Sequence record: KU686213.1
Length of the DNA stretch: 64,000 bases
Direction: 5' to 3' (one strand)
Positions within the stretch are counted from its first letter, which is position 1, and every line of letters begins with the position of its first letter. Shown here piece after piece: positions 12,230-64,000 of this stretch. A model generated the notes under the pieces. It worked only from the letters and a program-made list of their open reading frames with translations, ran no database searches and had not been told where the DNA came from. Position numbers and translations under genes: made by a program.

Positions 12230-12231
12230 TC

Positions 12232-12870
12232 ATGGCTGCTAATTGGGAAAAGAGGTCACTACATAGTTTTGGTTCAAACTTTAGGTTGGACATATGTAAT
12301 CCGCAGACTACAACATCAGGTAATCAAATCTATGAGTTGTATGCTGTTACTGATGAAGAAGAGGATGTAAGTCTTATTGGTTTAGGTGAGGATGGTAAAT
12401 TCCACTTATATAATGATAAGACTATTGAGATCGTTGGTGGTCAAAAAGCATCATCAAATGGTATAGATATTCTCATTCAAGGTAAGAATGGTGATGTATG
12501 TATCAATGCCGATAGAAATGGTCGCATCCGTATTCGTGGTAAGGACATTGTATTACAGGCTGATGAGGATGTAGATATTGTTGCTGGTAGAAACATCAAC
12601 TTGAAATCCGGTTCTGGTCGTGTTCTTATTTCAGGGAACACCTTGGAGAAGACTGGATTGAAAGGTAATTTACTTGACCCATCCGCACAATGGGCATTTA
12701 GAGTATTTGAAGGAACAGGTCTCCCAGCAGGTTCATTTGCACAATTAGCGTCACCATTCTCCGGTATTTCTAATTTAGCTGGTGACCTAATCAAAAATCC
12801 CAATTTATTTTCTGGGTTCGTTCAAGGTGCTGTTAGTAACGCTATTGCTTCAGCATCCTCTTTTGTATAG
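12232..12870 (+). CDS. gp5 C-terminal-like beta-helix spike protein
   Basis: Alternating beta repeats (IRIRGKDIVLQADEDVDIVAGRNINLKSG); ATG at 12232 preferred over GTG 12214. Confidence 0.5.
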   Translation: MAANWEKRSLHSFGSNFRLDICNPQTTTSGNQIYELYAVTDEEEDVSLIGLGEDGKFHLYNDKTIEIVGGQKASSNGIDILIQGKNGDVCINADRNGRIRIRGKDIVLQADEDVDIVAGRNINLKSGSGRVLISGNTLEKTGLKGNLLDPSAQWAFRVFEGTGLPAGSFAQLASPFSGISNLAGDLIKNPNLFSGFVQGAVSNAIASASSFV

Positions 12871-12873
12871 TGC

Positions 12874-12880
12874 CTAAATA
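12874..12880 (+). promoter_or_regulatory. Late promoter
   Basis: CTAAATA upstream of first collagen gene. Confidence 0.6.
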
Positions 12881-12910
12881 TAGCAGCACCCGTTTTATTA
12901 TTGTTTAGTA

Positions 12911-15871: not shown

Positions 15872-15886
15872 TTTACCTTTTTTATT

Positions 15887-30201: not shown

Positions 30202-30283
30202 ACCACTTACCAAAGTGTCCACTAACCCACCCGGTGCTGCCGTGGTGGGTTATACTAGTTGTATCAACAGAGCAGAGAGCTAC

Positions 30284-31537
30284 GTGATCCAACTTCGTCC
30301 CCATCAGCAAGAAGCACTTAACAAGCTGACCGTGGCGAGCCGTGGTCAAGTGATCGTCCCTACTGGCGGCGGTAAGACTCTTATCGGTATTATGGATGCC
30401 TGTAAGCGCTTTGAGAGCGCTTCTGAGCCCATCTCCATCATTGTTGTGGCTCCACGTTTACTTTTAGCTAACCAGCTCTGTGAAGAGTATATGGAGGTCA
30501 TCAAGGATCAAGTTTCTACTCAAGTTGTTCCCGCTCATATTCATTCTGGGGACACCTCACATTTCTCTACCACCAAAGCCTGTGAGATCCGTAACTTCGT
30601 CTCTATGACTCAGGCAGCTGGTCTTCACCGCATTTTCTTTACCACCTATCACAGCCTTCATAGGATCGCTGAGAGTAGTGTTCAAGCGGACACCATCTAC
30701 TTTGACGAGGCACACAACAGTGTCCAAAAGGGCTTCTACCCAGCTGTAAAGTTCTTCTCAGAGACCACGCAACGCGCATTCTTTTTTACCGCTACACCAA
30801 AACATTCGGTGACCCCAAAGAAGCCTGGAATGAACGACAGCAGTGTCTATGGAAACGTCATCGTGAACGTAGAAGCAGGCAAACTTGTCCAAGGGGGCTT
30901 CATTGTTCGCCCACAGGTCGTAGCACGTGAGCTGCGCCTACTCCAAAAGGATGAGCTGACTTCTCACCGTGATTCTGAGCATATTATTCAGAGCATCGAC
31001 GAGAGTCGCGTTAGTAAGGTTCTGGTCTGCGCCAAGAGTGTAAAACAGATTGTTCGTATGGTTGCTGAGTCTTCCTTTGTGAATGACTTGAAGGCACGTG
31101 GCTTCTCCTATATGTACATTGCTGCTTCCACAGGAGCAATCATCAACGGACACAAAGTAACCCGCGAAGAGTTCTTTAAGACTCTCAATGCTTGGGGTGC
31201 CGATAACACGAAGCAGTTCGTTGTTTTACATCACTCTATCCTCTCTGAGGGTATCAATGTGAGTGGCTTGGAAGCTGTTATTATGCTGAGAGCTATGGAT
31301 GCGGTAGGTGTCGCACAAACAATCGGAAGAGTTATTAGGCTTCACAAAGATGATGCCGCTGGTCTGCGTGCGGGAACAATCACACCAGGTAACACTTCTG
31401 AATATACTAAAAGCTTCGGTCTTGTTATTGTTCCCGTATTCAACACTACTCAACAGGGTGTAGCGCGTTCCGTTGATAAGATTGTTGATACCATCTTCAA
31501 CAAAGGTGAGGCAGCTGTATCTGTTATCCGTCGCTAA
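30284..31537 (+). CDS. SF2 DEAH helicase (type III Res/ISP-like), copy 1
   Basis: VPTGGGKT, DEAH, FTATPK, LSEGINV, QTIGRVIR; GTG 30284 follows the promoter cassette. Confidence 0.9.
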   Translation: MIQLRPHQQEALNKLTVASRGQVIVPTGGGKTLIGIMDACKRFESASEPISIIVVAPRLLLANQLCEEYMEVIKDQVSTQVVPAHIHSGDTSHFSTTKACEIRNFVSMTQAAGLHRIFFTTYHSLHRIAESSVQADTIYFDEAHNSVQKGFYPAVKFFSETTQRAFFFTATPKHSVTPKKPGMNDSSVYGNVIVNVEAGKLVQGGFIVRPQVVARELRLLQKDELTSHRDSEHIIQSIDESRVSKVLVCAKSVKQIVRMVAESSFVNDLKARGFSYMYIAASTGAIINGHKVTREEFFKTLNAWGADNTKQFVVLHHSILSEGINVSGLEAVIMLRAMDAVGVAQTIGRVIRLHKDDAAGLRAGTITPGNTSEYTKSFGLVIVPVFNTTQQGVARSVDKIVDTIFNKGEAAVSVIRR

Positions 31538-40906: not shown

Positions 40907-41057
40907 TTCTAGGGCTCGCTCTGACGCCCCTAGAAGCCTCTGAGAAGGTCAATGAGTTCTGTTCATATGTCGTTGGTATCCCCTACGCTAGCGACAACTT
41001 CACAGACGAAGAGTGGGGGAGATTTGTATATTGTAGAGAGTCCATAAGAGTACCACA

Positions 41058-41702
41058 ATGAATAAGATATTTGCATTATTGGCTGCTGTCGTAGCAGCTA
41101 CACCCGCACAAGCTGGGTTCATTATCCCTGATGATATTGTTCCACTAAGTGGAGAAAGAGCCAGTAGAATGTTCTGGCGTGGATGTATTGATGAGAAAGG
41201 TGAGATTACTAAGATAACTGTTAAGTGTGATAGAATCTTTAAGCCTAAACCAACCCAAGCAAGGGTAGAATGGAAGAACGCAAAGAAGTGTGAGGAATAT
41301 ACTCCTGGTTGTGTATCTGTTGATGCTAGTATTCAAGTTGGGGGCTTTCAGCTTTCAGTTTTATCAGCTAGAACTAGAAGACGCCGTGGTCCTGGTGGTG
41401 GTTGGGAGTCATATTCTCAACTAGATATGGCTCCATCTAAGAAAGGTTTTGAGCAATATTCTATCAACTGTACTGATCCTGATAGTGATATTAGAGTGCT
41501 AGATTTTGATGGTAAACCTAAGCATATGTATAGAACAACACAGTTTAGACTTGATCTATGTAATAGTGTATTCCCTGAGCTTGAGCGTGATACAGCATAC
41601 CAGTTGAAAGAGTTAGCTTGTAGGCTTACGAAGGACCCAAAAAAGAATAGAGAGTGTTGGATAGACTTTAAGGAGTGGAAAGCAAACAGGAGGTACAGAT
41701 AG
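41058..41702 (+). CDS. Hypothetical exported Cys-rich protein
   Basis: Signal peptide MNKIFALLAAVVAATPAQA. Confidence 0.65.
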   Translation: MNKIFALLAAVVAATPAQAGFIIPDDIVPLSGERASRMFWRGCIDEKGEITKITVKCDRIFKPKPTQARVEWKNAKKCEEYTPGCVSVDASIQVGGFQLSVLSARTRRRRGPGGGWESYSQLDMAPSKKGFEQYSINCTDPDSDIRVLDFDGKPKHMYRTTQFRLDLCNSVFPELERDTAYQLKELACRLTKDPKKNRECWIDFKEWKANRRYR

Positions 41703-41780
41703 ACCACCTTGAGTAGTGTCCACTGCCCCATCACAGGGGCTTTTTTATGCTCTATAATAATCACATACACACAGAAACAG

Positions 41781-42392
41781 ATGAAACTCAACCACAAATT
41801 CAATAAGCGAGCCAAAGTTGAGGATCGTATCATTCTATCTAAGTCTGGCACACTATCAAAGTTTACCAAAAACCTCCAGACTATTGCGGGTTATCAGAAT
41901 CCTGATAGATATGACCCAGATAAGTATAAAGGTGATGCCTTTGAGTGGTTTGCTGAATACTTCTTTAAAGTATTCTCATGCGACAAAATGTTCTTATATA
42001 TTACTGATTATGAACCCAACCAGGGGTCTGATTATGGTGTTGATGGTTTGGGTAAATATGTTCTTGATACTCTCAAGCAGGTAGCGTTGCAGGTCAAGTT
42101 TAAGTCAAATCAATCTTCAACATTATCTGCAAAAAATGACAGCCTCTCTAATTTTGGAGTACACGCATATACTAAGCATGGTATTGAAATTAAGAGTGAG
42201 TATATAGTCATATTTACCAATTGTAGTGGTATTGAGCAATCAACTTATAAAATTTATTGTGATCAAATTCGTTGTATTGATAAAGAAATTATTTCTAGGT
42301 ATGTGGATAATAATGAATCATTCTGGGGGGGTTTAGAGGAGTATGTCACTCCAAAGACTGTCACATCACAGTCCACATCACCCACCACCTGA
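41781..42392 (+). CDS. Mrr-like (D..QxK) restriction endonuclease domain protein
   Basis: GDAFEWFAEYFF...DYGVDGLG...ALQVKFKS. Confidence 0.7.
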   Translation: MKLNHKFNKRAKVEDRIILSKSGTLSKFTKNLQTIAGYQNPDRYDPDKYKGDAFEWFAEYFFKVFSCDKMFLYITDYEPNQGSDYGVDGLGKYVLDTLKQVALQVKFKSNQSSTLSAKNDSLSNFGVHAYTKHGIEIKSEYIVIFTNCSGIEQSTYKIYCDQIRCIDKEIISRYVDNNESFWGGLEEYVTPKTVTSQSTSPTT

Positions 42393-42421
42393 TCTATACT
42401 ACATACATCAACGAACCACCA

Positions 42422-43576
42422 ATGGATTTTCAATTTTCTCTAGACCTATGCCGACATATTCGTGATAAATGGAATAGTGCAAAAAATAAAAAGGTAGATA
42501 AACTACATCTGCCCATATCAGAAGACCTTGCTATTGATCTCTGTTCGGGCTATAATAATAATACTAAATTTGCATTATTTGATGCGGGTTGTATCCTTGC
42601 AATTACCCTCATTGGCATGGGACATGAGCCATCAAATATTTATGTGGTGGAGAGTCCCGAGTTTGACTATCATTATAGTATTGCAAAAGATCTGTCAACT
42701 AAACTTGGATTTAGTATCATTGAATATCCCCTCCTCCAAAAACCAGATTTTAATATGAACTTTACCGCAACTCTCGGCAATCCCCCCTATAGTGGACAAC
42801 TTCATCTTGAGTTTCTTCTGAAGTGTCTTGAGATATCTGATGAGGTTAAACTAATTCATCCATCTGGTTGGCTGACACGTAGTGATCGTTCAATTGAGAA
42901 AGATGTGAAGAATGCTCTAGATGGTAGAGTAAAGTCACTGAAGATATTCAATGGTGTTCCAGTATTCAATGCCGAGTTTCAAGCTCCTTTAGTTATTACA
43001 GAGGCGGTGAAGAGTTGGGATGGTCCAGTAACAGTAACATATGATAATACAGGTAATACCTATGAAATTGATTCTATCTGGGACTTCCCTACTGGTTATT
43101 GGGAACCAACTGAGATCAACCTCACTCTCAGAGATTTAATTTTTAGTGAAGCAAAGAAGTCTAACCTACTTTCACTAAGAACTTCTAATATCAATTCAGT
43201 TCCACTTAATCTCCCCACGATTTGTGGTCATCCCGTAGTAAACGACAGTAAAAAGTTATTTGGTGATGACTTTCACACGTTCTTCTATCATAATAGTAAC
43301 ATCTATACTCACGAGAACAATGAAGGTAGATTTTACTCACTCAAGAGTGAAGAAGAGAGGGATAATCTAGTTTCATATCTCAAGACTAAGTTTGCTAGAT
43401 TTGCTCTTGCCCTGAATAAAGCAACTAATAGAAATAACGTTATTAGGTATATTGAGAATGTACCACTACCGCCACTTGATGTTGAGTGGACTGATGAGAG
43501 TGTATATGAATATTATGGTCTAAGTTCGGAACAGATTGATTCGATTGAATCGTTTATTCCAACATACTATAAGTGA
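42422..43576 (+). CDS. Eco57I/TaqI-like adenine methyltransferase, NPPY + target recognition part
   Basis: TLGNPPY, LIHPSGWL, C-terminal YLKTKFARF...VP...WTDE.VY.YYGLS; motif I degenerate (FDAGCILA). Confidence 0.8.
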   Translation: MDFQFSLDLCRHIRDKWNSAKNKKVDKLHLPISEDLAIDLCSGYNNNTKFALFDAGCILAITLIGMGHEPSNIYVVESPEFDYHYSIAKDLSTKLGFSIIEYPLLQKPDFNMNFTATLGNPPYSGQLHLEFLLKCLEISDEVKLIHPSGWLTRSDRSIEKDVKNALDGRVKSLKIFNGVPVFNAEFQAPLVITEAVKSWDGPVTVTYDNTGNTYEIDSIWDFPTGYWEPTEINLTLRDLIFSEAKKSNLLSLRTSNINSVPLNLPTICGHPVVNDSKKLFGDDFHTFFYHNSNIYTHENNEGRFYSLKSEEERDNLVSYLKTKFARFALALNKATNRNNVIRYIENVPLPPLDVEWTDESVYEYYGLSSEQIDSIESFIPTYYK

Positions 43577-43668
43577 TCCAATAATTAACCAATTAAAATA
43601 GTGTCACACTACACCAAAACGGGGTAGTGTGGTTTGCTATACTATATTCATACAAACGACCCCCCACA

Positions 43669-45114
43669 ATGAAAGCATATCCACACCAGTCCCGCACCCT
43701 TACTGCTATGGATGAGAATGATCGTGGTCTCATTGTCATTCCCACTGGTGGCGGTAAGACATTTGTGATGGCAGAAAATCTCCGTCAGAACCTTTCAGGT
43801 GTGTCTGTAGTGGTTGCTCCTAGGATCCTTTTGGCACAACAGTTATTCGGTGAGATTGACTCCATCATCGGTAATAGTGCTACCTTCCAGCACATGTTTG
43901 CATATAGTGGAGAAGCAATTGAGCGTGAGATGGATGAGTTGAGTCCAGAACAGATTCTTGATGTTAACTATGCTAATTGTAGTTCAGATAATGTTAAAAG
44001 TGAATATGTAAGATCTCTATCCAATAATTTACCCCTAATTATCTTTACAACATACCATTCACTTAATAATGTTGTTGGGGCTAATATTCCTATCGACAGA
44101 GCATATCTAGATGAGGCACACAATGCAACATCTATTCAGTTCAGTAATTCGGTTAAAGAGCTCAGTGATGTTGTTACGAAAATGTATTCTTTTACTGCAA
44201 CACCCAAGTTAGGTGAATCTACTACAGGCAGAGGAAACAATGTAGTAAAGACATTTGGTGAGAAAATTATCGAAGTTCCTGCTAAGGAGTTGGTTGAGAA
44301 TGGTATTATTGTTCCCCCTATGCCAGTCACTGTGTATACTGGTTTGTGTAGAGAAAAACTTGATGAGACTATGCTCTCCCGCGATAGTATTATTCGCGCA
44401 TACTCCCATTGCAAAGATAATCATCCAGGTATCAATCATAAGATTCTAGTTGCTGCTGATGGTACTAAGACTATCAATGATATGAGAACATCCACTAATT
44501 TAATCAAAAGTCTTAATGCTGACGGATGTGATGTATTCATGGTAACTTCAGCTCATGGTAGTTGGATGAATAATACTGAAATTAAGAGTAGAAGTGAGTT
44601 CTTAAATCTTCTCCGCGAATATGGATCCAATCCCACTAAGAAGATTGTTGTTATTCACCATTCTATTCTATCTGAAGGTATTGATGTGCCAGGTATGACT
44701 GGTGTTCTTGTCCTTAGAAATATGAATGTTAGTGTCTTAAGGCAGACTATTGGTAGGGTATTGCGTATGCTTAAGACTGACCGCAATGCTATTGCTAATG
44801 GTGACATTGATGCTGGCGATTACATGAACTACCATAAATCATATGGTCTGGTTATGGTTCCTGTTCACAAGGATGATGGTTCTGATTTGGATTCTACTGT
44901 TGGTATAGTATATAATTCAATTATGGGTATGGGCTTCACCCCTGAAGATGTGATAAATGAGGAGAATGTGCGGGGTGAGCATAAACTAGAACTGCCAGAT
45001 GATCTAAAGAAGTCTATTCAGCAGAAGATTAAAGAAGTGGACAATAACTGGAAATGGATGTATAATACGACTATCATAGAGAGAGACTTTTCCTCTCTTT
45101 TACATCTGCTATGA
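43669..45114 (+). CDS. SF2 DEAH helicase (type III Res/ISP-like), copy 2
   Basis: IPTGGGKT, DEAH, FTATPK, LSEGIDV, QTIGRVLR. Confidence 0.9.
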   Translation: MKAYPHQSRTLTAMDENDRGLIVIPTGGGKTFVMAENLRQNLSGVSVVVAPRILLAQQLFGEIDSIIGNSATFQHMFAYSGEAIEREMDELSPEQILDVNYANCSSDNVKSEYVRSLSNNLPLIIFTTYHSLNNVVGANIPIDRAYLDEAHNATSIQFSNSVKELSDVVTKMYSFTATPKLGESTTGRGNNVVKTFGEKIIEVPAKELVENGIIVPPMPVTVYTGLCREKLDETMLSRDSIIRAYSHCKDNHPGINHKILVAADGTKTINDMRTSTNLIKSLNADGCDVFMVTSAHGSWMNNTEIKSRSEFLNLLREYGSNPTKKIVVIHHSILSEGIDVPGMTGVLVLRNMNVSVLRQTIGRVLRMLKTDRNAIANGDIDAGDYMNYHKSYGLVMVPVHKDDGSDLDSTVGIVYNSIMGMGFTPEDVINEENVRGEHKLELPDDLKKSIQQKIKEVDNNWKWMYNTTIIERDFSSLLHLL

Positions 45115-45120
45115 GAAAGT

Positions 45121-45522
45121 ATGTCTAAGAATACGCATAATGAAAACGTAGGGTCTAATATTATACGTTCTAATGAGCGCATTGATCAGACTGGTGAGGT
45201 ATTCACTCCAATGGAACTATGCCGTGAGATGGTCAACGAACTACCACTAGATGTACTACAGAATCCTAAGAGCACCTTTTTAGATAATTCTGCTGGTCAC
45301 GGTAACTTTATCATCGCTCTCCGCGATAAGCTACTAGAATATCACGAGTTATCACATATCTTAGACAATATGCTCTATGCTGTTGAGTTTATGGAGGATA
45401 ATCACGCCGAGTTGTGTGAGAGAATAGGTGTGCCTGTTACTCACCCACATTATGTTAGAGCTGATGCTACCACATATGATTATAGCTTTGGTGAGCCTAT
45501 AGGATTAGAGGCATTCTTCTAG
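45121..45522 (+). CDS. Methyltransferase SAM-binding module (motif X-I-II, no NPPY), copy 1
   Basis: GEVFTP, FLDNSAGHGNF, LYAVE; no catalytic motif. Confidence 0.8.
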   Translation: MSKNTHNENVGSNIIRSNERIDQTGEVFTPMELCREMVNELPLDVLQNPKSTFLDNSAGHGNFIIALRDKLLEYHELSHILDNMLYAVEFMEDNHAELCERIGVPVTHPHYVRADATTYDYSFGEPIGLEAFF

Positions 45523-45597
45523 CCACTTTGAGTAGTGTCCACTGCCCCAACACAGGGGCATTTTTAATGTTATGATTTATCCATCAGCTTAACGCAT

Positions 45598-45915
45598 ATG
45601 ATCGAAGCTATCGCAGCTCCAAACACACAGGTCACTGAAGAGGGTGGACTCTTCTACATCTCTATGAGCGTTGGTGCTGATGAGGTATGCACTGCTTGTT
45701 ATATGCGCGACAAGGCGCAGAGAGTGGTCATTATCCAATTAGATACACCAGTGGAGTATAGAGGCAATGGCTACGCCACAGCCCTCCTGGAGGGCATACA
45801 GAGGCGTGAGAAGACTGGTCCTATCCGTGTGATTAGTACTAGCCATGCCGTTGGTTTCTACAATAAGCTAGGATACATTGAAGTATCACCATACGTGTTC
45901 CAAAGCTCAAACTGA
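45598..45915 (+). CDS. GNAT family acetyltransferase
   Basis: YRGNGYATALL and AVGFYNKLGY. Confidence 0.8.
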   Translation: MIEAIAAPNTQVTEEGGLFYISMSVGADEVCTACYMRDKAQRVVIIQLDTPVEYRGNGYATALLEGIQRREKTGPIRVISTSHAVGFYNKLGYIEVSPYVFQSSN

Positions 45916-45976
45916 CCACTGAACCCCCACAGGGCACCTAAATGCCCTATACTATTCACATAAGCAACGGACACCA

Positions 45977-46870
45977 ATGACCAAGAACCTACACCTTGAG
46001 CACCCAGAAGACCTTATCTTGTCTGGTGACCTATCAGTGCTTGACTGGTTCTCTACTATCTCCACCACCAGTGTGAAGATGGACGGCAGTGTAGCCATTG
46101 TATGGGGCATCAACCCAGAGAATGGTAAGTTTTTCGTAGGTAAGAAATCAGTATTCAATAAGAAGAAGGTTGAGATATGCTATACACCACAAGATATTAG
46201 GAAGTTCTACGGTGACCGTGAGGAACTAGCAGACATTCTCCTCACTTGCCTTGACTTCTTGCCCCGCACTGGTGGTATCTATCAAGGTGACTTCATTGGG
46301 CTGGGTGGTAACTCAAAATACACACCCAACACCATTACATATGACTTTGGCTCTCCTGTTGAGGAAGTCATTATCATTGCTCCTCACACATACTATGTTG
46401 GTGATACTATCAAGGGATGTGTTGCTCACCCACTATCACACCAATTAGAATCAACTGGTGATGTTCTGTTTGTTCAGCCTACCGTTGATTGTAAGTGTAC
46501 CTTCTATGATTCTGTTGATGCTATCCGCACATCAGTGAAGAAGTCCAAGTTCTTGACGGATAAATCAGCCAAAGAGGTTCGTGTTATACTTAACGCATTC
46601 GTTCGCGAAGGTAAGTCCATCAGCCCACAACTACTAGAACAAGTTGTAGGTGACTGGAATCTCACTATGTCCTACTTCCAAATCATTGACCTAAAGGAGC
46701 AAATGATGGAAGCTATGATAGTATATGATGGACCAAAGGCATTTATTGGTGATATGCCCGTAGCTTGTGAAGGCTATGTTCGCACCAATCGCCACGGTTC
46801 TATGAAACTGGTTGACCGCTACCAGTTCGCACAGGCTAACTTCAACAACACACGATTCAGGTCAAACTAA
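45977..46870 (+). CDS. ATP-dependent ligase-like nucleotidyltransferase
   Basis: KMDG (motif I), QGDF, EGYV (IV), KLVDR (V). Confidence 0.65.
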   Translation: MTKNLHLEHPEDLILSGDLSVLDWFSTISTTSVKMDGSVAIVWGINPENGKFFVGKKSVFNKKKVEICYTPQDIRKFYGDREELADILLTCLDFLPRTGGIYQGDFIGLGGNSKYTPNTITYDFGSPVEEVIIIAPHTYYVGDTIKGCVAHPLSHQLESTGDVLFVQPTVDCKCTFYDSVDAIRTSVKKSKFLTDKSAKEVRVILNAFVREGKSISPQLLEQVVGDWNLTMSYFQIIDLKEQMMEAMIVYDGPKAFIGDMPVACEGYVRTNRHGSMKLVDRYQFAQANFNNTRFRSN

Positions 46871-48145: not shown

Positions 48146-48934
48146 ATGGAAACCAATTCAGAAACTATGAACAAGCTACTCAATGGTGAATGTCTTGAAG
48201 TTATGAAGACACTAGCTGATAATTCAATTGATATGGTTTTCTGTGACCTACCTTATGGTACTACACAGAACTCTTGGGATACTATCATCCCATTCGATGA
48301 GTTGTGGGCAGAGTATCATCGTATCGTCAAGATTGATGGTGCTATTGTACTAACAGCACAACCACCATTTGATAAGGTCTTAGCTTGTTCAAATCTAAAA
48401 GACTTCCGTTATGAATGGATATGGGAGAAGAATAAAGCAACTGGGCACCTAAATGCTAAGAAGATGCCTATGAAGGCACACGAGAACATACTAGTATTTT
48501 ATAGAAAGCTTCCTACATATAACCCACAGATGACCACAGGTCATAAGCCAATGAATGCAGTATTGCCTAAGAGCAATATGCCTGCACCAAAGGAGAAGAG
48601 AAACTATAACCACGTAGAAGAGCGACTAGGTAATCCTGGTGGTGGAACTAGTAGGTATCCAAGAGATACTGTTAGGTTCCCCGTTATCAACAATGATGAC
48701 CCAAAGAAGTTCCACCCAACACAGAAACCTATCCCCTTGATTGAGTACTTCATCAAGACATATTCTAATCCAGGTGATGTTGTACTAGACAATTGTATGG
48801 GCTCAGGTTCTACCTGTATTGCTGCATCTAATCTAGATCGACAGTTTGTTGGTATTGAGATGAGTGAGGAATATTACAACCTAGCAGTTGAGTGGGTCGA
48901 ATCCGAACGTAGACTCACCCAGTTCTTTAACTGA
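48146..48934 (+). CDS. Beta-class N4-C/N6-A DNA methyltransferase (orphan)
   Basis: CDLPYG (IV), HPTQKP, VLDNCMGSGST (I). Confidence 0.93.
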   Translation: METNSETMNKLLNGECLEVMKTLADNSIDMVFCDLPYGTTQNSWDTIIPFDELWAEYHRIVKIDGAIVLTAQPPFDKVLACSNLKDFRYEWIWEKNKATGHLNAKKMPMKAHENILVFYRKLPTYNPQMTTGHKPMNAVLPKSNMPAPKEKRNYNHVEERLGNPGGGTSRYPRDTVRFPVINNDDPKKFHPTQKPIPLIEYFIKTYSNPGDVVLDNCMGSGSTCIAASNLDRQFVGIEMSEEYYNLAVEWVESERRLTQFFN

Positions 48935-51335: not shown

Positions 51336-52040
51336 GTGTCCACTGCCCTCAGTGGTATTCTTCCTATTCTCTTGAGACAAGAATTTCCAGATGCTGAAAT
51401 TTGCTGCCTTGAGTATAATAATATGTTTGTAAAACATCTAGAAACTCTTGGCTTTATCACTTATACATCTAAAGACACACTTCCTATGAATTTTGACTTA
51501 ACTATAGGCAACCCACCATATGGGAATAGAGCTTCATTAGCAATTAAGTTTGTTAATAAGGGGTTAGAGTTATCTGGTCGTGTTGATATGGTACTACCCC
51601 TATCATTTAATAAACCATCAATACAAAACTCAATTGACCCATATTCTGAATGTATATTCAGCGAAGAACTACCTGCCGATACATTCCCCAATGGAATTAG
51701 GGCAGTCCGCCAAATATGGGTAAAGTCAAAGACTAAGAGGGAGCTAGTTCCCCTACCAACTACACACTCAGACTTTGAGTTTATTAAATGGGAAGATAGA
51801 GACACTGCCGACCTAATGATTGGGGCAGTAGGCTCTGGTCCTTCTGGTAGAGTCTACACAGAGAACTTCAGTCATTATCAATGCAAGCATAGTTTCATTA
51901 AATGTAAGTCTCAGGAGATTATTGATAGGTTGGTTGAGATGGGACCTGAACTGAGAGAAACTTCTAAAGCTCAAAATGGTAGAGGTGGTGTATGTAAGTC
52001 TGATATTGTTACACTGTACATTAGTAAGTATGATTCATGA
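51336..52040 (+). CDS. Adenine methyltransferase NPPY + target recognition part (start uncertain)
   Basis: MNFDLTIGNPPYG, LAIKFVNK, VLPLSF, QIW; no intact motif I. Confidence 0.75.
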   Translation: MSTALSGILPILLRQEFPDAEICCLEYNNMFVKHLETLGFITYTSKDTLPMNFDLTIGNPPYGNRASLAIKFVNKGLELSGRVDMVLPLSFNKPSIQNSIDPYSECIFSEELPADTFPNGIRAVRQIWVKSKTKRELVPLPTTHSDFEFIKWEDRDTADLMIGAVGSGPSGRVYTENFSHYQCKHSFIKCKSQEIIDRLVEMGPELRETSKAQNGRGGVCKSDIVTLYISKYDS

Positions 52041-52438
52041 GTAAGAACAGGCACAACCTGGATGTTGGTTCATCCATTGATAGAAGCGATGAGCGTATTG
52101 CAGAGACACAAGAGGTATTCACTCCCATTTCTCTATGTGCATCTATGGTCAATGATATTGATGAAGATACACTCAAGAATCCATCCAGTAAGTTTCTAGA
52201 CAACTCTGCTGGTTCTGGCAACTTCTTGGTTGCCCTCCGCGATGAGCTATTGGAATATCACGAGTTATCACATATCTTAGATAATATGCTATATGCGGTT
52301 GAGCTTATGGAAGACAATCACGCCGAGTTATGTGAGAGGTTAGGTGTTCCTGTCACCCATCCACACTATGTCTGCCACAATGCACTCACATATGATTATA
52401 GCTTCGGTGAGCTTGTAGGATTAGAGGCATTCTTCTAG
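52037..52438 (+). CDS. Methyltransferase SAM-binding module (motif X-I-II, no NPPY), copy 2
   Basis: EVFTP, FLDNSAGSGNF; 100/133 identical to 45121-45522 by manual alignment. Confidence 0.8.
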   Translation: MSKNRHNLDVGSSIDRSDERIAETQEVFTPISLCASMVNDIDEDTLKNPSSKFLDNSAGSGNFLVALRDELLEYHELSHILDNMLYAVELMEDNHAELCERLGVPVTHPHYVCHNALTYDYSFGELVGLEAFF

Positions 52439-59781: not shown

Positions 59782-60048
59782 ATGACTTCAGTTTTTCTAG
59801 TATTTCATGTTGAGTATCCTTTCAACGAAGGCTGTGATAATGTTATTGGTGATGAATTCTCTAAAGTATTTCATACCAAAGAAGATGCTGAAGAGTATAT
59901 CAAGAAGACTGATGTTTCAGAGTCAGTTCGAGTTGCTAAGTGGGCAAAAGAAAAGTGTGATAGGTTGGGTTGGGGTGAGGACATGCTTAAGCGCCTGATT
60001 AAATCAAATGTCAAAGAATGGGAGATTAAAGAGATTCCATTCGGCTGA
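59782..60048 (+). CDS. Hypothetical early protein
   Basis: Single-gene cassette. Confidence 0.65.
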   Translation: MTSVFLVFHVEYPFNEGCDNVIGDEFSKVFHTKEDAEEYIKKTDVSESVRVAKWAKEKCDRLGWGEDMLKRLIKSNVKEWEIKEIPFG

Positions 60049-60088
60049 TGCCCTCTCGCTACAAATAAAAACCACTAAAAAACACAAA

Positions 60089-60355
60089 ATGATCTCAACT
60101 CAAATCACTATTACAATCAAACGTAGCGAGTGGGAATGTTACATCGACACCCCAGATTCAGTCATCGAAACTATTAACAACTACTTTGCCTTTGTATTAC
60201 AATCACGTGATACGGCATTAGAAGCACAAGCTGAAATCTTTAAGTTTATGTGCATGTTTAGTGAGTTTGGTTTCTATGATAGTGAGCCTAGGCAATGTGC
60301 AACAGATACTATTAACGATTTCTTCGGGACAAGCTTGAGCAGGTGGGACAGTTGA
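60089..60355 (+). CDS. Hypothetical early protein
   Basis: MISTQITI...; FGFYDSEPR motif. Confidence 0.6.
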   Translation: MISTQITITIKRSEWECYIDTPDSVIETINNYFAFVLQSRDTALEAQAEIFKFMCMFSEFGFYDSEPRQCATDTINDFFGTSLSRWDS

Positions 60356-60429
60356 GCTAGTGGCACAAGGGAGCCGCCACTGGCTCCCACAGCTGCTATG
60401 ATTACAAAGTAATCGAGGGAGACACCCCA

Positions 60430-60621
60430 ATGAACATTCAAGTCAACGGCTACGCAATCGACACCCTTAAGCAAGCGCTTCAAGAGTCTTCGATGCTATG
60501 GCAAGAGCGTATCGACCAAGCCGAGCGTGGCGAACGTCAGAACCTCAGCATCGAGGGAGCTCGTGCGATGCAAGATGACTTGAGGGACATCCTAGAGCAG
60601 ATCAGGTTGCAAGACGCCTGA
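60430..60621 (+). CDS. Hypothetical early protein
   Basis: Single-gene cassette. Confidence 0.65.
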   Translation: MNIQVNGYAIDTLKQALQESSMLWQERIDQAERGERQNLSIEGARAMQDDLRDILEQIRLQDA

Positions 60622-60694
60622 TCAACTGGCACACGGGAGCCACACAGGCTCCCACCACCTGCTACAATTGATTCATACCAAACAAAGGAACCCA

Positions 60695-60952
60695 ATGAAC
60701 GGCTGGACTAACTACGAAACCTGGAACGCATCACTTTGGATCAGCAACGAGGAGTTCCTCTACAACACCGCTCGCGCTTGCGTGACCTATTGTGACCCCA
60801 GCGAGCAGCCTTGGACCAAGTTCGTCCGTTGTATGACCGAGGGACAGATCGGCAGCTTCCTTGGTGAGACTGGCGATGGCGTCCGCTGGGATGATACCAG
60901 CATCAACGCCGATGAGATGAACGAGATGATGCTAGAGTTAGTCGCCGACTGA
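60695..60952 (+). CDS. Early phage protein
   Basis: MNGWTNYETWNASLWI motif, ...TGDGVRW. Confidence 0.75.
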   Translation: MNGWTNYETWNASLWISNEEFLYNTARACVTYCDPSEQPWTKFVRCMTEGQIGSFLGETGDGVRWDDTSINADEMNEMMLELVAD

Positions 60953-61023
60953 ACTGGCACAAGGGGGCTCGCAGCCCCCTCCCACAGCTGCTACAATTAC
61001 AGAGTAATCAAAACACAGCACCA

Positions 61024-61194
61024 ATGACCGAAATGACTTTCTACGTGATGTTCAGCTCCGAGGAGCTTACAGAGCCAGACTACATTGGTCCTTTCTACAA
61101 GCTAGAAGACGCCGAAGATTACGCAGATCACCAGAACCAAGGGCTTGCGAATAACGGCATCCCTGGCTGGGTTGCTTCTTACGGTGTCGTCTGA
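61024..61194 (+). CDS. Small early protein (56 aa)
   Basis: IGPFYKLEDAEDYA motif; single-gene cassette. Confidence 0.6.
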   Translation: MTEMTFYVMFSSEELTEPDYIGPFYKLEDAEDYADHQNQGLANNGIPGWVASYGVV

Positions 61195-61221
61195 ACCAAT
61201 CTCCAAACTGTCCCAATGGGG

Positions 61222-61250
61222 TTGACGGTTCCCCTCAAAACCGTTATATT
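61222..61250 (+). promoter_or_regulatory. Sigma70-type promoter
   Basis: TTGACG-17 bp-TATATT. Confidence 0.65.
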
Positions 61251-61312
61251 AGATTCATCGGTTGAGCCACACTCTACAGGCTCCCGATTATTCACCTCAT
61301 TTCTCTACAACA

Positions 61313-61615
61313 ATGAAAACCACACTTTCCACCATCTTCAGCCGCAATAACGTGATGAATGCCCTCCTGGCTCTCTGCACTGCTATCGAGTTCTGCTACG
61401 ATATGGGCGCACGCTTCGGTACCTGGTATCGCAACGGCGGCAACGCACAGATCCGCAATGCCTTTGTAATGACGGTAGCAGCTCTCCTATGGCTCGGTGA
61501 GACCGCTAGGCTAGGTTATGCCGTGGTTCGCCGTGATGGTCCCCAATGGCTCGCACAGGCTAACGCAACACGCCATCGTATCAGCCGCGCATTCAGCTAC
61601 GAGTATGCCGCCTGA
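61313..61615 (+). CDS. Hypothetical early membrane-associated protein
   Basis: Hydrophobic helices. Confidence 0.6.
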   Translation: MKTTLSTIFSRNNVMNALLALCTAIEFCYDMGARFGTWYRNGGNAQIRNAFVMTVAALLWLGETARLGYAVVRRDGPQWLAQANATRHRISRAFSYEYAA

Positions 61616-61692
61616 GGCACTGTCACAAGGAGGCTAGCAGCTCCCCCCCTAGCTGCTACAATTGATTCATACCAAACAAAGGGAGCCACCCA

Positions 61693-61923
61693 ATGTCCAG
61701 CACCACTTACACCCAGGCAGCTTACGCCGAAGCAATCCGCCGCCTCTCGGCTGGCTACGTTTCAGAGTTTGCTGAGTTTGCTGCAGGTGATGAGAGGATG
61801 CATGAGCTGATGATGGAACTTGCTTCTGAGTTCGTTGATGCCAATCTACCCATCGTCAGGGAGGAGGACGCAATCGACGTAGCTGCTGAGCTCCACTTGG
61901 GCATCACAATCCGTGCCGTGTGA
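61693..61923 (+). CDS. Hypothetical early protein
   Basis: Single-gene cassette. Confidence 0.65.
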   Translation: MSSTTYTQAAYAEAIRRLSAGYVSEFAEFAAGDERMHELMMELASEFVDANLPIVREEDAIDVAAELHLGITIRAV

Positions 61924-62005
61924 CGGCTGACCAACTATCACAAGGGGGCTTGCCTAGCCCCCACCACCTGCTACAATTGATTCATACCAAACAAAGGAAC
62001 CTCAA

Positions 62006-62320
62006 ATGCGCAAGATTGAAATCCAAATGAACCGCGCTGTTCAGTCTGGCACCAATTTCAGCCAAGCTAACACCTCAGTTCATCATCACGAGGGCGTAGC
62101 AATTGTCCGCCTACACGGTAGCAAGATCGCTGAGGTAGGCGACGATTTCATCACTCTCTTCGATGGTGGCTTCCAATCCAATACTACCAAGAGCCGCCTC
62201 AATGCCTTGATGGCTGAGTTCTGCTCACCCGGTGAGAACGTATTCCAGAAAGCTTACCAGTGGTTCATTCGCGCTAACGGCGTCACCATCCCATTTGAGT
62301 CAGGTGTGACACTCCGCTAA
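62006..62320 (+). CDS. Early phage protein
   Basis: LHGSKIA...DGGFQSNTTKSRLNAL motif. Confidence 0.75.
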   Translation: MRKIEIQMNRAVQSGTNFSQANTSVHHHEGVAIVRLHGSKIAEVGDDFITLFDGGFQSNTTKSRLNALMAEFCSPGENVFQKAYQWFIRANGVTIPFESGVTLR

Positions 62321-62387
62321 ACTGGCACACGCTCCCTAGCGGGAGCTCCCCCAGCTGCTACAATTGATTCATACCAAAGGAACCACA

Positions 62388-62957
62388 ATGAACACCTTTC
62401 TGACCTCCTCATTCCAAAACGTTCGCTCTTCAAAGCGTACTGACGAACTCCACACCGTCTTGCTAGCTGAGGTACTGGAAGCTAACCCCCAGTGGGCAGG
62501 CTACGACTGGCAGTTCGAATACCGCCTTCCCGTTGACGGCTTCGGTGGAACCTTTGATATTGATATCGCCGGTTTCGTCAACGGTGAGCTGAAGGTGGCT
62601 GTCCTGGCTAAGGCAATGAACTCAAACGTCAATAAGAATATCAAAAACTACGCTAACACCACCATTGGCGAAGCTGCCCGTCTGACCTATGCCCCTGGCT
62701 TAGACCTCGAGGCTGTGCTCTTCGTTTCAGTCCTTCCCCGCACTGCCCCCCGCTTCAATAAGGCAGGCGAGGTTGTGGGACTTGACAACGTGCTAAGCGC
62801 TAAGGCTCGCACCAACATCGGCAATATCATCGAAGCTCAGTACGGTGGGCTGGTTCAGGTCATCGACCTATTCTTCGATATCGACAATATCTCAGAGATG
62901 CTGACCTCTGCCGACTTTCAAACTATCACCGTATCGAACGTCGATAAGGTGAGCTAA
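62388..62957 (+). CDS. Putative PD-(D/E)xK restriction-endonuclease-like protein
   Basis: FEYRL...FDIDIAG...VAVLAK..NSNVNKNIKNY..TTIGE pattern. Confidence 0.45.
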   Translation: MNTFLTSSFQNVRSSKRTDELHTVLLAEVLEANPQWAGYDWQFEYRLPVDGFGGTFDIDIAGFVNGELKVAVLAKAMNSNVNKNIKNYANTTIGEAARLTYAPGLDLEAVLFVSVLPRTAPRFNKAGEVVGLDNVLSAKARTNIGNIIEAQYGGLVQVIDLFFDIDNISEMLTSADFQTITVSNVDKVS

Positions 62958-63039
62958 GCCAATTGAGCCACTGGCACAAGGGAGCGGCACAGCTCCCCCC
63001 AGCTGCTACAATTGATTCATACCAAACAAAGGAACTCAA

Positions 63040-63318
63040 ATGAAAATCTCACTCGATCAGCAAGTCGCTCAACTCGCAGCCGAAGGTCATCAAGAGATTG
63101 CAGTCATCAAACTCCCTAGTCAGGCAACCCGCAAGCGTCGCAAGCCTAGCAAGCGTCGCACTACCTCTACGAATGCGGTCAGCCAAACTGCCTACACTCA
63201 AACCGAGAGCCGCAACCTAGGCAAGATCAATTCAGCCTATGCGCGTCAGCATAGTGCCGATAGGAGGGCAGCAGCTCAACAGCGAGCAGCCGAGCTTAAA
63301 GGTCAGCCAATCTTCTAA
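63040..63318 (+). CDS. Basic early protein
   Basis: IKLPSQATRKRRKPSKRR; single-gene cassette. Confidence 0.6.
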   Translation: MKISLDQQVAQLAAEGHQEIAVIKLPSQATRKRRKPSKRRTTSTNAVSQTAYTQTESRNLGKINSAYARQHSADRRAAAQQRAAELKGQPIF

Positions 63319-63388
63319 GAGGCACAAGGGGGCTAGGCAAGCCCCCACCAGCTGCTACAATTGATTCATACCAAACAAGGAACCCACA

Positions 63389-63835
63389 ATGGCTACTCTC
63401 AACTATTCACCCGCTCAGCAGACTCAACTCATTGAGTTCTATCAGCAATGGCTGCCTAGAGTCAATGCCTTCGGATACGACAATCTCCCCGACGGTTATC
63501 ACACATACTACCGCCACGGCAAGAAGCTGGCTAAGGCAGCAGCAGCCGCTAAGATAGTCGAAGCTAAAGCAGCGCGTCGTCGTGGCAATCCATACCTCCG
63601 TCCCGAAGTTGAATTTATTGTGCATAGCTACGTTCGGACCGATAGTCCTTCTATCGTTGCCGACGAATTTAAGGCAGCTTTTATCGACTCTCCCCATAGT
63701 CGCGAGAGCGTCCGCTCTTGTGCTGGGCAGCTTCGCTCATTAGACAACCTCTGCCCCGACGATACGGGCTGGACTGTAAAAAGCCTAGTCGCAGAAGTAG
63801 CTAGCGAATTATACCCCGAGCGCTTCGCCGCATGA
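63389..63835 (+). CDS. Hypothetical early protein
   Basis: Single-gene cassette. Confidence 0.65.
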   Translation: MATLNYSPAQQTQLIEFYQQWLPRVNAFGYDNLPDGYHTYYRHGKKLAKAAAAAKIVEAKAARRRGNPYLRPEVEFIVHSYVRTDSPSIVADEFKAAFIDSPHSRESVRSCAGQLRSLDNLCPDDTGWTVKSLVAEVASELYPERFAA

Positions 63836-63906
63836 TTCTATCAAGGGGCTAGCCACCTAGCCCCGATCTATGGTACAATTCATTCATACCAAACCAGGAA
63901 CCGACA

Positions 63907-64000
63907 ATGCCTTTCTCACCTGCCTGCCGCCTTTCAGACCAGACCCGTGTATGGGTTGAGCGCTCAATCTATGAAGGGTGCGATTGGCAAATCGAAAAGC
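63907..64000 (+). CDS. Early protein, truncated by window edge
   Basis: ATG after cassette; open to the window end. Confidence 0.45.
   Translation, partial: MPFSPACRLSDQTRVWVERSIYEGCDWQIEK

What the first reader, a model, noticed from the sequence alone, without database searches (positions are those of the whole stretch)
41716..45522. Four-gene cluster resembling a Type ISP restriction-modification enzyme split into modules
Seen, in order: Mrr-like nuclease (D..QxK), NPPY methylase with target-recognition region, DEAH helicase, and a motif-X/I SAM-binding module. The first three each have their own early cassette (41716, 42371, 43601). Known: Type ISP enzymes (LlaGI, LlaBIII) join an Mrr nuclease, SF2 helicase, gamma methylase and TRD in one polypeptide. 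Inference: a phage-borne, multi-subunit, rearranged ATP-dependent R-M-like machine that could degrade host or competing phage DNA while marking its own genome, with parts swappable by cassette recombination. I cannot place it in a described type.
Basis: partly seen in the sequence, partly recalled or inferred. Interest (0 to 1): 0.85.

Follow-up and report, generated by a model that had tools for sequence, protein, structure and literature searches.

The report
Split Type ISP-like restriction-modification cassette in cyanophage
A marine cyanophage carries, as separate genes, the nuclease, motor and DNA-methylase parts that lactococcal Type ISP restriction enzymes join in one protein. Sister isolates hold quite different helicase-methylase gene sets at the same spot, so the phage appears to swap DNA-marking and DNA-cutting specificities.

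Summary
The window is Synechococcus phage S-CAM7 isolate 0910SB42. Four + strand genes sit between two terminator/promoter cassettes:
- ORF1, 41781-42392: Mrr-type PD-(D/E)xK nuclease (F54-E55, D84xGxD88, Q104xK106).
- ORF2, 42422-43576: structurally complete gamma-class N6-adenine methylase with a TaqI-like recognition domain.
- ORF3, 43669-45114: DEAH SF2 helicase.
- ORF4, 45121-45522: half-methylase carrying only motifs X, I, II and III.

The Type ISP reading is supported:
- All four map onto one 1251-aa phage protein ordered nuclease, helicase, SAM half, NPPY half.
- The helicase-family profile (11 sequences, five of them nuclease-helicase fusions) has LlaBIII (1.6e-28) and LlaGI (2.1e-25) as its best solved matches.
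- Nuclease, methylase and helicase are adjacent in all 14 other loci that could be judged, in three gene orders.

Cassette swapping is real. Three S-CAM7 isolates with 97.7-99.7% identical flanks carry non-homologous sets between the promoter cassette and ORF4. ACG-2014f isolates show the same swap.

Two corrections: ORF4 belongs to the constant backbone, and ORF2 does not need it to complete its fold, so ORF4's role here is open.

Cutting, methylation and complex formation are untested. I rate this a new variant of a known kind.

The parts
41704..41775 (+). PeSL-like terminator/early-promoter cassette upstream of ORF1: GTGTCCACT, hairpin at 41725-41740 with a T-run, and TATAAT at 41753-41758. 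It is the left border of the swapped segment.
   Evidence: Positions 41715-41775 are 100% identical in isolate 0910CC49 although the genes on both sides differ. A direct repeat of 41704-41747 lies just after the ORF4 homologue in the other two isolates, and window 45523-45566 after ORF4 is 100% identical to the cassette upstream of the 0809CC03 gene set.
41781..42392 (+). ORF1 (N), 203 aa: stand-alone Mrr-family PD-(D/E)xK nuclease.
   Evidence: phrog_7683, E = 3.8e-102. The family has 309 representatives. E55, G86, D88, Q104 and K106 are invariant. 19 of 80 members hit Mrr_cat_2 and 8 of 80 hit Mrr_cat. The best solved match of the family profile is the LlaBIII nuclease domain, E = 0.022. The AF2 model has pLDDT 94.6 and an alpha-beta-beta-beta-alpha-beta core. 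Foldseek top hits are restriction-type nucleases and viral Mrr-like and helicase N-terminal domains.
42371..42400 (+). Early-promoter cassette upstream of ORF2 (TCCACA, 17 nt, TATACT).
42422..43576 (+). ORF2 (M), 384 aa: complete gamma-class N6-adenine DNA methylase with a C-terminal recognition domain.
   Evidence: NPPY at 120-123, with N120 and P121 invariant. AF2 pLDDT 90.6 with strands beta1 to beta4 all present. Foldseek matches CamA, M.TaqI, M.BseCI, BpuSI and HsdM at about 5e-9. The N-terminal part is shared with the ACG-2014f methylase and the recognition domain with Aeromonas phage Aeh1p090.
43601..43643 (+). Variant early-promoter/hairpin cassette upstream of ORF3 (GTGTCACACT, hairpin, TATACT).
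   Evidence: It was not picked up by the strict pattern.
43669..45114 (+). ORF3 (H), 481 aa: SF2 DEAH helicase-like ATPase of the Type ISP-related kind.
   Evidence: ResIII, DEAD and Helicase_C. Walker A, DEAH and motif VI residues are invariant in the family. The family profile hits LlaBIII at 1.6e-28 and LlaGI at 2.1e-25, with the next best (XPBII) at 5.6e-16. ORF3 aligns to P0089 residues 217-635 at 3e-35.
45121..45522 (+). ORF4 (S1), 133 aa: stand-alone SAM-binding half of a gamma methylase (motifs X, I, II and III; no motif IV). It is a constant backbone gene next to the swapped segment.
   Evidence: phrog_4376 and phrog_21201. It aligns to P0089 residues 855-964 at 2e-19. The family profile hits the N-terminal halves of CamA, BseCI, BsaXI and HsdM. 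Motifs are conserved in 72 distinct homologues. It is 94-95.5% identical in all S-CAM7 isolates.
45523..45566 (+). Downstream PeSL-like cassette with terminator hairpin at 45543-45560. It is a direct repeat of the cassette upstream of ORF1.
41780..45116 (.). Swapped segment (ORF1 to ORF3). It is replaced by non-homologous helicase and methylase genes in isolates 0910CC49 and 0809CC03.
51423..52438 (+). Second, paralogous pair: M' (NPPY half starting near strand beta4; its homology to P-SSM2_036 starts at 51486) and S2 (52037-52438, 133 aa).
   Evidence: P-SSM2_036/037 is the same split and Aeh1p090 is the fused, permuted form.

Best explanation
The cluster is a fragmented, phage-borne relative of the Type ISP (Type I single-polypeptide) restriction-modification enzymes.

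Shown here:
- Its parts are an Mrr-type nuclease (ORF1), a complete gamma-class N6-adenine methylase with its own recognition domain (ORF2), an SF2 DEAH translocase-like ATPase (ORF3) and an extra SAM-binding half-methylase (ORF4).
- Relatives fuse these parts in one chain.
- ORF1 to ORF3 form a 3.3-kb segment, bounded by a promoter-terminator (PeSL-like) cassette and by ORF4, that is exchanged for unrelated helicase and methylase sets between near-identical isolates.

Inferred:
- The proteins assemble early in infection, driven by the early-promoter cassettes.
- ORF2 reads a short asymmetric site and methylates adenine.
- At unmethylated sites ORF3 burns ATP to translocate along DNA, and ORF1 cuts when translocating complexes meet or stall.
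- Phage DNA is protected by its own mark. Host DNA, or the DNA of a co-infecting phage with another allele, is not.

ORF4 is the constant partner. In M'-S pairs it supplies strands beta1 to beta3 and the SAM pocket to an NPPY half that lacks them. Beside the complete ORF2 its role is unresolved; it may be a shared subunit or a SAM sensor.
For: Domain fusion.
- ORF1 maps to P0089 residues 30-213 (1e-19), ORF3 to 217-635 (3e-35), ORF4 to 855-964 (2e-19) and ORF2 residues 107-150 to 960-1015 (1e-3).
- Pfam on P0089 gives ResIII, N6_Mtase, Eco57I and MmeI_Mtase.
- P0016 is nuclease, helicase and a full methylase in one chain.
- Its relative P0017 is a nuclease-helicase fusion followed by separate 356-aa methylase and 168-aa half-methylase genes.

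Family placement.
- The helicase-family profile, which includes five nuclease-helicase fusions, has LlaBIII (1.6e-28) and LlaGI (2.1e-25) as best hits; the LlaGI match lies in the helicase region alone.
- The best hit of the nuclease profile is LlaBIII residues 22-111.
- The Mrr motifs shown by mutagenesis to matter in LlaGI (E38, D74, D78, Q92, K94; PMC2790908) all have counterparts that are invariant or nearly so.

Folds.

Synteny.
- The genes occur as N-M-H-S here, S-N-M-H in ACG-2014f and H-M-N-S in Bellamy.
- Apart from the window, 15 loci carry N: ACG-2014f, Bellamy and 13 IMG/VR contigs. One has N at the contig edge. In the other 14, M and H are adjacent.

Swapping.

PeSL-type cassettes are known to mediate modular shuffling in T4-type phages (PMC2839356, PMC4122927).
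Against: - There are no biochemical data.
- The motif I position of ORF2 lacks the Gly-rich loop (FDAGCILA here, FDTFLTL in relatives), so SAM binding by ORF2 alone is uncertain.
- The ORF2 family profile and P0089 do not reach LlaGI or LlaBIII by sequence.
- Foldseek E-values for ORF1 against solved structures are weak (0.03-0.1).
- The alternative cassettes at the same locus have no detectable Mrr domain, so not every allele is visibly able to cut.
- ORF4 is redundant with the N-terminal half of ORF2.
- PADLOC and NCBIfam have no model for ORF1 or ORF2.
- A lytic phage that restricts must also protect its own replicating DNA.
Confidence: 0.7

Rival explanations
1. The methylase is an orphan that shields phage DNA from host restriction. 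The helicase and nuclease serve replication, recombination or bulk host-DNA breakdown. The genes are neighbours without forming a site-directed restriction machine.
For: - Hyperplastic regions of T4-type phages pack unrelated small genes behind their own promoters.
- ORF1, ORF2 and ORF3 each have their own promoter cassette.
- The window holds further methylases (48146-48934) and a paralogous core helicase (30245-31534).
- The alternative cassettes lack a recognisable nuclease.
Against: - N, H and M are fused in single chains in relatives.
- They stay adjacent through three gene orders and in all 14 other loci that could be judged.
- The closest solved relatives of the helicase are restriction enzymes, not replicative helicases.
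Confidence: 0.13
2. ORF2 and ORF4 together make one split methylase: ORF4 supplies the SAM pocket that ORF2 lacks.
For: - ORF4 has canonical motifs X, I and II, whereas motif I of ORF2 is degenerate.
- In P-SSM2, and in the window's second pair, the NPPY protein starts at or near strand beta4 and is directly followed by S.
- Aeh1p090 fuses the two halves.
- ORF4 ends at P0089 residue 964 and the ORF2 match starts at residue 960.
Against: - The AF2 model of ORF2 has its own strands beta1 to beta3 at high confidence, and its whole fold matches complete gamma methylases.
- Elsewhere, methylases with canonical motif I (0809CC03 353 aa; L096 356 aa) are also followed by an S-type gene.
Confidence: 0.1
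3. It is a Type III-like system, with Mod as the methylase and Res as helicase plus nuclease.
For: - ORF3 hits Pfam ResIII.
- Aeh1p090 has the IV, recognition domain, X, I order of beta-class Mod proteins and carries a GenBank note 'similar to type III restriction system endonuclease'.
Against: - ORF2 has the gamma order with its recognition domain at the C-terminus.
- In fusions the nuclease sits at the N-terminus of the helicase, not the C-terminus as in Res.
- LlaBIII and LlaGI are the best hits, and no Type III Res or Mod chain is among the 60 listed.
- N6_N4_Mtase (PF01555) is not hit.
Confidence: 0.04
4. It is a decaying remnant of a selfish restriction-modification element with no present function.
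For: The genes are fragmented, the locus is variable, and ORF4 looks like a truncated gene.
Against: - All catalytic motifs are invariant across large families.
- All four reading frames are intact, and ORF4 is 133 aa in all three S-CAM7 isolates and 132-134 aa in ACG-2014f, Bellamy and P-SSM2.
- The AF2 models are confident.
Confidence: 0.03

Closest known systems
[quoted passage not shown]
   Same: - The set of modules is the same: Mrr-family nuclease with E, DxGxD and QxK; SF2 DEAH ATPase; gamma N6-adenine methylase; C-terminal recognition domain.
- They are the best solved matches for the helicase-family profile and the nuclease profile.
- Recognition domains are swapped between close relatives, as between LlaGI and LlaBIII (abstract).
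   Different: - Here there are four separate genes in the order N-M-H-S instead of one 1400-1600-aa chain.
- There is an extra stand-alone half-methylase.
- The carrier is a lytic T4-like cyanophage, not a bacterial plasmid.
- No coupler domain was identified.
- The methylase part is not detectably similar to LlaGI by sequence.
Classical Type I systems (HsdR, HsdM, HsdS)
   Same: - The nuclease lies N-terminal to an SF2 motor: the N-H fusions P0017, P0030 and P0150 resemble HsdR.
- The methylase is gamma-class, and HsdM structures are among the fold and profile hits.
- The system is multi-subunit.
   Different: - There is no HsdS; the recognition domain is part of the methylase.
- The nuclease is Mrr-type, whereas HsdR has a RecB-family nuclease fold (PMC2790908).
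- The profile match to HsdR is much weaker than to LlaBIII (4.9e-9 against 1.6e-28).
PeSL mobile regulatory cassettes of T4-type phages (Arbiol et al. 2010, PMC2839356; Comeau et al. 2014, PMC4122927)
   Same: - They are composite early-promoter and stem-loop motifs, repeated on one strand, that flank genes differing between close relatives.
- The borders of the swapped segment coincide with them.
   Different: - The motif sequence here (GTCCACT, hairpin, TATACT) is specific to this cyanophage.
- I found no cyanophage example in PMC4122927.
- The cargo is a multi-gene enzyme system rather than single ORFans.
Genes in pieces and circularly permuted amino-methylases (beta-class order IV, recognition domain, X, I)
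   Same: - Aeh1p090 has NPPY, a recognition domain and motifs X, I and II in one chain.
- The cyanophage M'-S pairs are the same arrangement cut in two.
   Different: - The motifs are of the gamma/Eco57I type.
- Next to ORF2 the half-protein is an addition to a complete methylase, not a completion of one.

Membership tests
Type ISP restriction-modification enzymes | Single polypeptide joining nuclease, helicase, methylase and recognition domain | tested here: not met
   There are four separate ORFs with three internal promoter cassettes. Fused relatives exist: P0089 (1251 aa) and P0016 (1076 aa).
Type ISP restriction-modification enzymes | Mrr-family nuclease motifs I (F-E), II (DxGxD) and III (QxK) | tested here: met
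   ORF1 has F54-E55, D84YGVD88 and Q104VK106. E55, G86, D88, Q104 and K106 are invariant in 80 sequences. The motifs are as defined for LlaGI. The fold is PD-(D/E)xK.
Type ISP restriction-modification enzymes | SF2 helicase-like ATPase related to that of LlaGI and LlaBIII | tested here: met
   The A5 profile (six stand-alone helicases plus five nuclease-helicase fusions) hits LlaBIII at 1.6e-28 and LlaGI at 2.1e-25 as the top two hits; the LlaGI match lies in the helicase region alone. Walker A, DEAH and motif VI residues are invariant.
Type ISP restriction-modification enzymes | Gamma-class N6-adenine methylase with NPPY followed by a recognition domain | tested here: met
   The AF2 model of ORF2 matches CamA, M.TaqI, BseCI and BpuSI over the whole fold. 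NPPY is conserved, with N120 and P121 invariant. No sequence-level match to the LlaGI methylase was found.
Type ISP restriction-modification enzymes | ATP-driven translocation, cleavage on collision of enzymes from head-to-head sites, one-strand methylation | not testable with these tools
   This needs ATPase, triplex-displacement and cleavage assays and a methylome.
Type III restriction-modification (Mod and Res) | Beta-class Mod (motif IV, recognition domain, motifs X and I) and Res with a C-terminal nuclease | tested here: not met
   ORF2 has the gamma order. In fusions the nuclease is N-terminal to the helicase. PF01555 is not hit.
Type I restriction-modification (HsdR, HsdM, HsdS) | Separate specificity subunit HsdS | tested here: not met
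   No HsdS-like gene is present. The recognition domain is the C-terminal part of ORF2.
PeSL mobile regulatory cassettes | Repeated early-promoter and stem-loop motif flanking genes that differ between close relatives | tested here: met
   There are 7 copies on the + strand and none on the - strand, against 0.47 expected. The segment borders lie at these motifs in S-CAM7 and ACG-2014f.
Split or permuted methylase (M' plus S) | The NPPY half lacks strands beta1 to beta3 and the partner supplies motifs X and I to III | tested here: inconclusive
   This is met by anatomy for P-SSM2_036/037, and Aeh1p090 is the fused form. The window's second M' may keep a remnant of the N-terminal half upstream of strand beta4. 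It is not met for ORF2 plus ORF4, because ORF2 has its own strands beta1 to beta3. Physical complementation was not tested.

The most novel reading that the evidence does not exclude
ORF4-type proteins are a constant SAM-binding 'socket' subunit. Interchangeable helicase, methylase and nuclease cassettes plug into it, giving T4-like cyanophages a switchable restriction-modification weapon. That weapon would be used against co-infecting relatives: it would cut genomes lacking the same mark, and recombinational repair would then spread the cassette, as in homing. Negative frequency-dependent selection would explain why near-identical isolates carry different alleles.
Probability: 0.25. Interest if true: 0.85.

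Novelty: new variant of a known kind. Interest (0 to 1): 0.65.

Why it matters
- Type ISP enzymes are known as single-chain bacterial defences against phages. Here the same machinery is taken apart into subunits and carried by a lytic phage.
- Natural fusion and fission series (N+M+H+S; NH+M+S; NHM) show where the chain can be cut. They offer a way to study how nuclease, motor and methylase are coupled.
- The allelic cassettes in otherwise identical cyanophages point to conflict between phages, or shifting host restriction landscapes, as a force shaping marine phage populations.
- They also give a set of natural specificity variants to mine.
- The conserved stand-alone half-methylase is found in more than 80 viral loci and in P-SSM2, S-SKS1 and Bellamy. 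It has no described function.

Tried and rejected
- Single-sequence searches of solved structures were uninformative for ORF1, ORF2 and ORF4, and weak for ORF3. Profiles were needed.
- PADLOC and NCBIfam had nothing for ORF1 or ORF2.
- P0089 and the ORF2 profile did not reach LlaGI or LlaBIII by sequence.
- The scan of bacterial and archaeal genomes with the ORF1 alignment failed because no stretch was conserved enough. Presence of the split form in cellular genomes is therefore not assessed.
- The idea that ORF4 completes ORF2 was rejected on the AF2 model. hhalign of the ORF4 family against the ORF2 family gave only a weak collinear match (E = 0.011, probability 3.8%).
- An HMM of the ORF4 family finds no such half inside the neighbouring methylases, apart from a weak hit in 0809CC03.
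- A Type III reading was rejected on motif order and on where the nuclease sits in fusions.
- The alternative cassettes have no Mrr domain and no match to a solved structure.
- Literature searches found no description of this cluster. A 2026 preprint reports mutations in an S-CAM7 'DNA methylase' during coevolution, but does not say which one.

Full report
**Identity of the window.** Positions 41000-46000 are 100% identical to Synechococcus phage S-CAM7 isolate 0910SB42 (KU686213.1) at the same coordinates. S-CAM7 is a T4-like cyanomyovirus (Kyanoviridae, Mazuvirus).

**Observation.** Four + strand ORFs fill 41781-45522.
- ORF1 (203 aa) has no Pfam hit but matches phrog_7683 at 3.8e-102.
- ORF2 (384 aa) has NPPY at residues 120-123.
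- ORF3 (481 aa) hits ResIII, DEAD and Helicase_C.
- ORF4 (133 aa) hits N6_Mtase positions 21-87 only weakly, but hits phrog_4376 and phrog_21201 strongly.

**Promoter cassettes.** The composite motif GTCCAC, hairpin, TATA(A/C)T occurs 7 times on the + strand and never on the - strand, against 0.47 expected. Copies lie before ORF1 and ORF2, and a variant lies before ORF3. ORF4 starts 6 nt after the ORF3 stop and has no cassette. Terminator-like hairpins at 41725-41740 and 45543-45560 bracket the cluster. The generic sigma-70 scan is not enriched.

**ORF1 is an Mrr-type nuclease.**
- An exhaustive HMMER search found 309 family representatives.
- In 80 aligned members E55, G86, D88, Q104 and K106 are invariant, and D84 is nearly so.
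- This is the F-E, DxGxD, QxK pattern defined for LlaGI and Mrr. In LlaGI, changes at D74, D78 and K94 abolish cleavage (PMC2790908).
- 19 of 80 members hit Mrr_cat_2 and 8 hit Mrr_cat.
- The best solved match of the family profile is the LlaBIII nuclease domain (E = 0.022).
- The AlphaFold model (pLDDT 94.6) has the PD-(D/E)xK core, with E55 on the helix, D88 at strand 2 and Q104/K106 on strand 3.
- Foldseek's top solved hits are all restriction-type nucleases, but with weak E-values.
- In the viral library the model matches Mrr-like proteins and the N-terminal domains of giant-virus SF2 helicases.

**ORF2 is a complete methylase.** Its model (pLDDT 90.6) has strands beta1 (50-53), beta2 (73-77), beta3 (98-101) and beta4 (114-119) followed by NPPY. 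It matches CamA, M.TaqI, M.BseCI, BpuSI and HsdM at about 5e-9. The motif I position is not Gly-rich (FDAGCILA here, FDTFLTL or GDPxGxHS in relatives), although D54 is nearly invariant. Its N-terminal part resembles the ACG-2014f methylase and its recognition domain resembles that of Aeromonas phage proteins. Recognition domains have therefore been shuffled.

**ORF3 and Type ISP.** I built a profile from ORF3, its cyanophage relatives and five nuclease-helicase fusions. It hits LlaBIII at 1.6e-28 and LlaGI at 2.1e-25. The next hits are XPBII at 5.6e-16 and HsdR at 4.9e-9. The LlaGI match covers the helicase region alone.

**ORF4 is half a methylase.** Its family profile hits the N-terminal SAM-binding halves of CamA (5.9e-7), BseCI, BsaXI and HsdM. 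EVFTP, FxDxxxGxG, E89 and the YDY end are conserved in 72 distinct homologues. It stops just before strand beta4.

**Fusions link the four genes.**
- Some ORF1-family members sit at the N-terminus of ResIII helicases (P0017, P0030, P0097, P0131, P0145, P0150).
- P0089 (1251 aa) adds N6_Mtase, Eco57I and MmeI_Mtase domains.
- ORF1, ORF3, ORF4 and ORF2 map onto P0089 at residues 30-213, 217-635, 855-964 and 960-1015.
- P0016 (1076 aa) is likewise nuclease, helicase and a full methylase.
- Its relative P0017 is a nuclease-helicase fusion followed by a separate complete methylase and a 168-aa half-methylase.
- These contigs look phage-like, with many small co-oriented genes and, in one case, Gp23.

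**Synteny.** The genes co-occur in three orders:
- N-M-H-S in the window;
- S-N-M-H in ACG-2014f;
- H-M-N-S in Bellamy.

Apart from the window, 15 loci carry N: ACG-2014f, Bellamy and 13 of the 80 IMG/VR loci found with ORF4. In one, N lies at the contig edge. In the other 14, M and H are adjacent. ORF4 homologues are almost always directly preceded by one of three things:
- an NPPY-bearing gene, which may be a full methylase, a helicase-methylase fusion of 1015-1137 aa, or a roughly 190-aa half that starts at strand beta4;
- the nuclease gene, with the methylase just upstream of it;
- in a few loci, only a contig end.

In Aeromonas T4-like phages the NPPY half and the ORF4-like half are one chain in permuted order (Aeh1p090).

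**Cassette swapping.**
- Isolates 0910CC49 and 0809CC03 have 97.7-99.7% identical flanks.
- Between the promoter cassette (window 41715-41775) and ORF4 (from 45117-45120) they carry different genes. 0910CC49 has a 704-aa helicase-like protein and a 348-aa Eco57I-type methylase. 0809CC03 has 319-aa and 448-aa helicase halves and a 353-aa methylase.
- The cassette before ORF1 and the sequence after ORF4 are direct repeats.
- ACG-2014f isolates show the same exchange (N-M-H against a 691-aa plus a 337-aa protein). There it lies downstream of a constant ORF4 homologue and is again bounded by repeated intergenic cassettes.
- This fits the PeSL model of modular shuffling in T4-type phages (PMC2839356, PMC4122927).
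- The alternative cassettes have no detectable Mrr domain.

**Interpretation.** The evidence places the cluster as a fragmented relative of Type ISP enzymes. It fails the single-polypeptide criterion, so it is not a member in the strict sense. It most likely works like one: site recognition and adenine methylation by ORF2, ATP-driven translocation by ORF3 and cleavage by ORF1. Assembly, activity, target and the role of ORF4 are all inferences. ORF4 is the least explained part. It clearly completes NPPY halves elsewhere. Here, and in L096, it accompanies a complete methylase.

**Novelty.** I found no paper describing this system. One database label already calls the ACG-2014f ORF1 homologue a 'restriction endonuclease', and another calls the 0910CC49 704-aa protein a restriction subunit.

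Noticed in passing
window 51423-52438: A second, paralogous pair: an NPPY half-methylase (its homology to P-SSM2_036 starts at 51486) overlapping a second 133-aa ORF4-type gene (52037-52438). The 3' halves of the two ORF4-type genes are nearly identical in DNA while the 5' halves differ, which suggests gene conversion within the genome.
   Followed up: partly
window 30245-31534: A paralogue of ORF3 (32% identical) that is 49-52% identical to the 'core' helicase found directly after ORF4 homologues in P-SSM2, Bellamy and most metagenomic loci. In S-CAM7 it lies 14 kb away and is preceded by a promoter cassette at 30217.
   Followed up: partly
window 30217, 32712, 39901, 41718, 42371, 52453, 57722: Repeated GTCCACT, hairpin, TATACT cassettes (PeSL-like), all on the + strand and each about 20-25 nt before a start codon.
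   Followed up: yes
window 42323-42421: GenBank starts ORF2 (AOV62245.1) at a CTG at 42323. That start overlaps ORF1 and lies upstream of the ORF2 promoter cassette. Homologue N-termini support the ATG at 42422.
   Followed up: partly
window 41058-41702: A 214-aa protein with a hydrophobic N-terminus and no family hit. It is present in 0910SB42 and 0809CC03 (99% identical) but replaced by other sequence in 0910CC49, so it forms a second small variable patch just upstream of the cassette.
   Followed up: partly
L002 3852-7005 and L003 3581-6996; L099 5485-8570: The alternative cassettes (helicase-like proteins of 691-704 aa, or 319+448 aa, with methylases of 337-353 aa) have no detectable nuclease domain. 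In 0809CC03 the helicase is itself split into two genes.
   Followed up: partly
window 45598-46870 and 48146-48934: Conserved backbone genes downstream of the cluster: a small GNAT acetyltransferase, a DUF6267 protein and a beta-class N6_N4 adenine methylase.
   Followed up: no
window 12001-18000 and 60001-64000: G+C rises to 0.47-0.52, against about 0.38-0.42 elsewhere in the window.
   Followed up: no
L009 4001-5248 (Aeromonas phage Aeh1p090) and L008: A single-chain, circularly permuted methylase (NPPY at residues 9-12, then a recognition domain, then motifs X, I and II at the C-terminus). It has no helicase or nuclease neighbours and sits next to a glucosyltransferase gene.
   Followed up: partly
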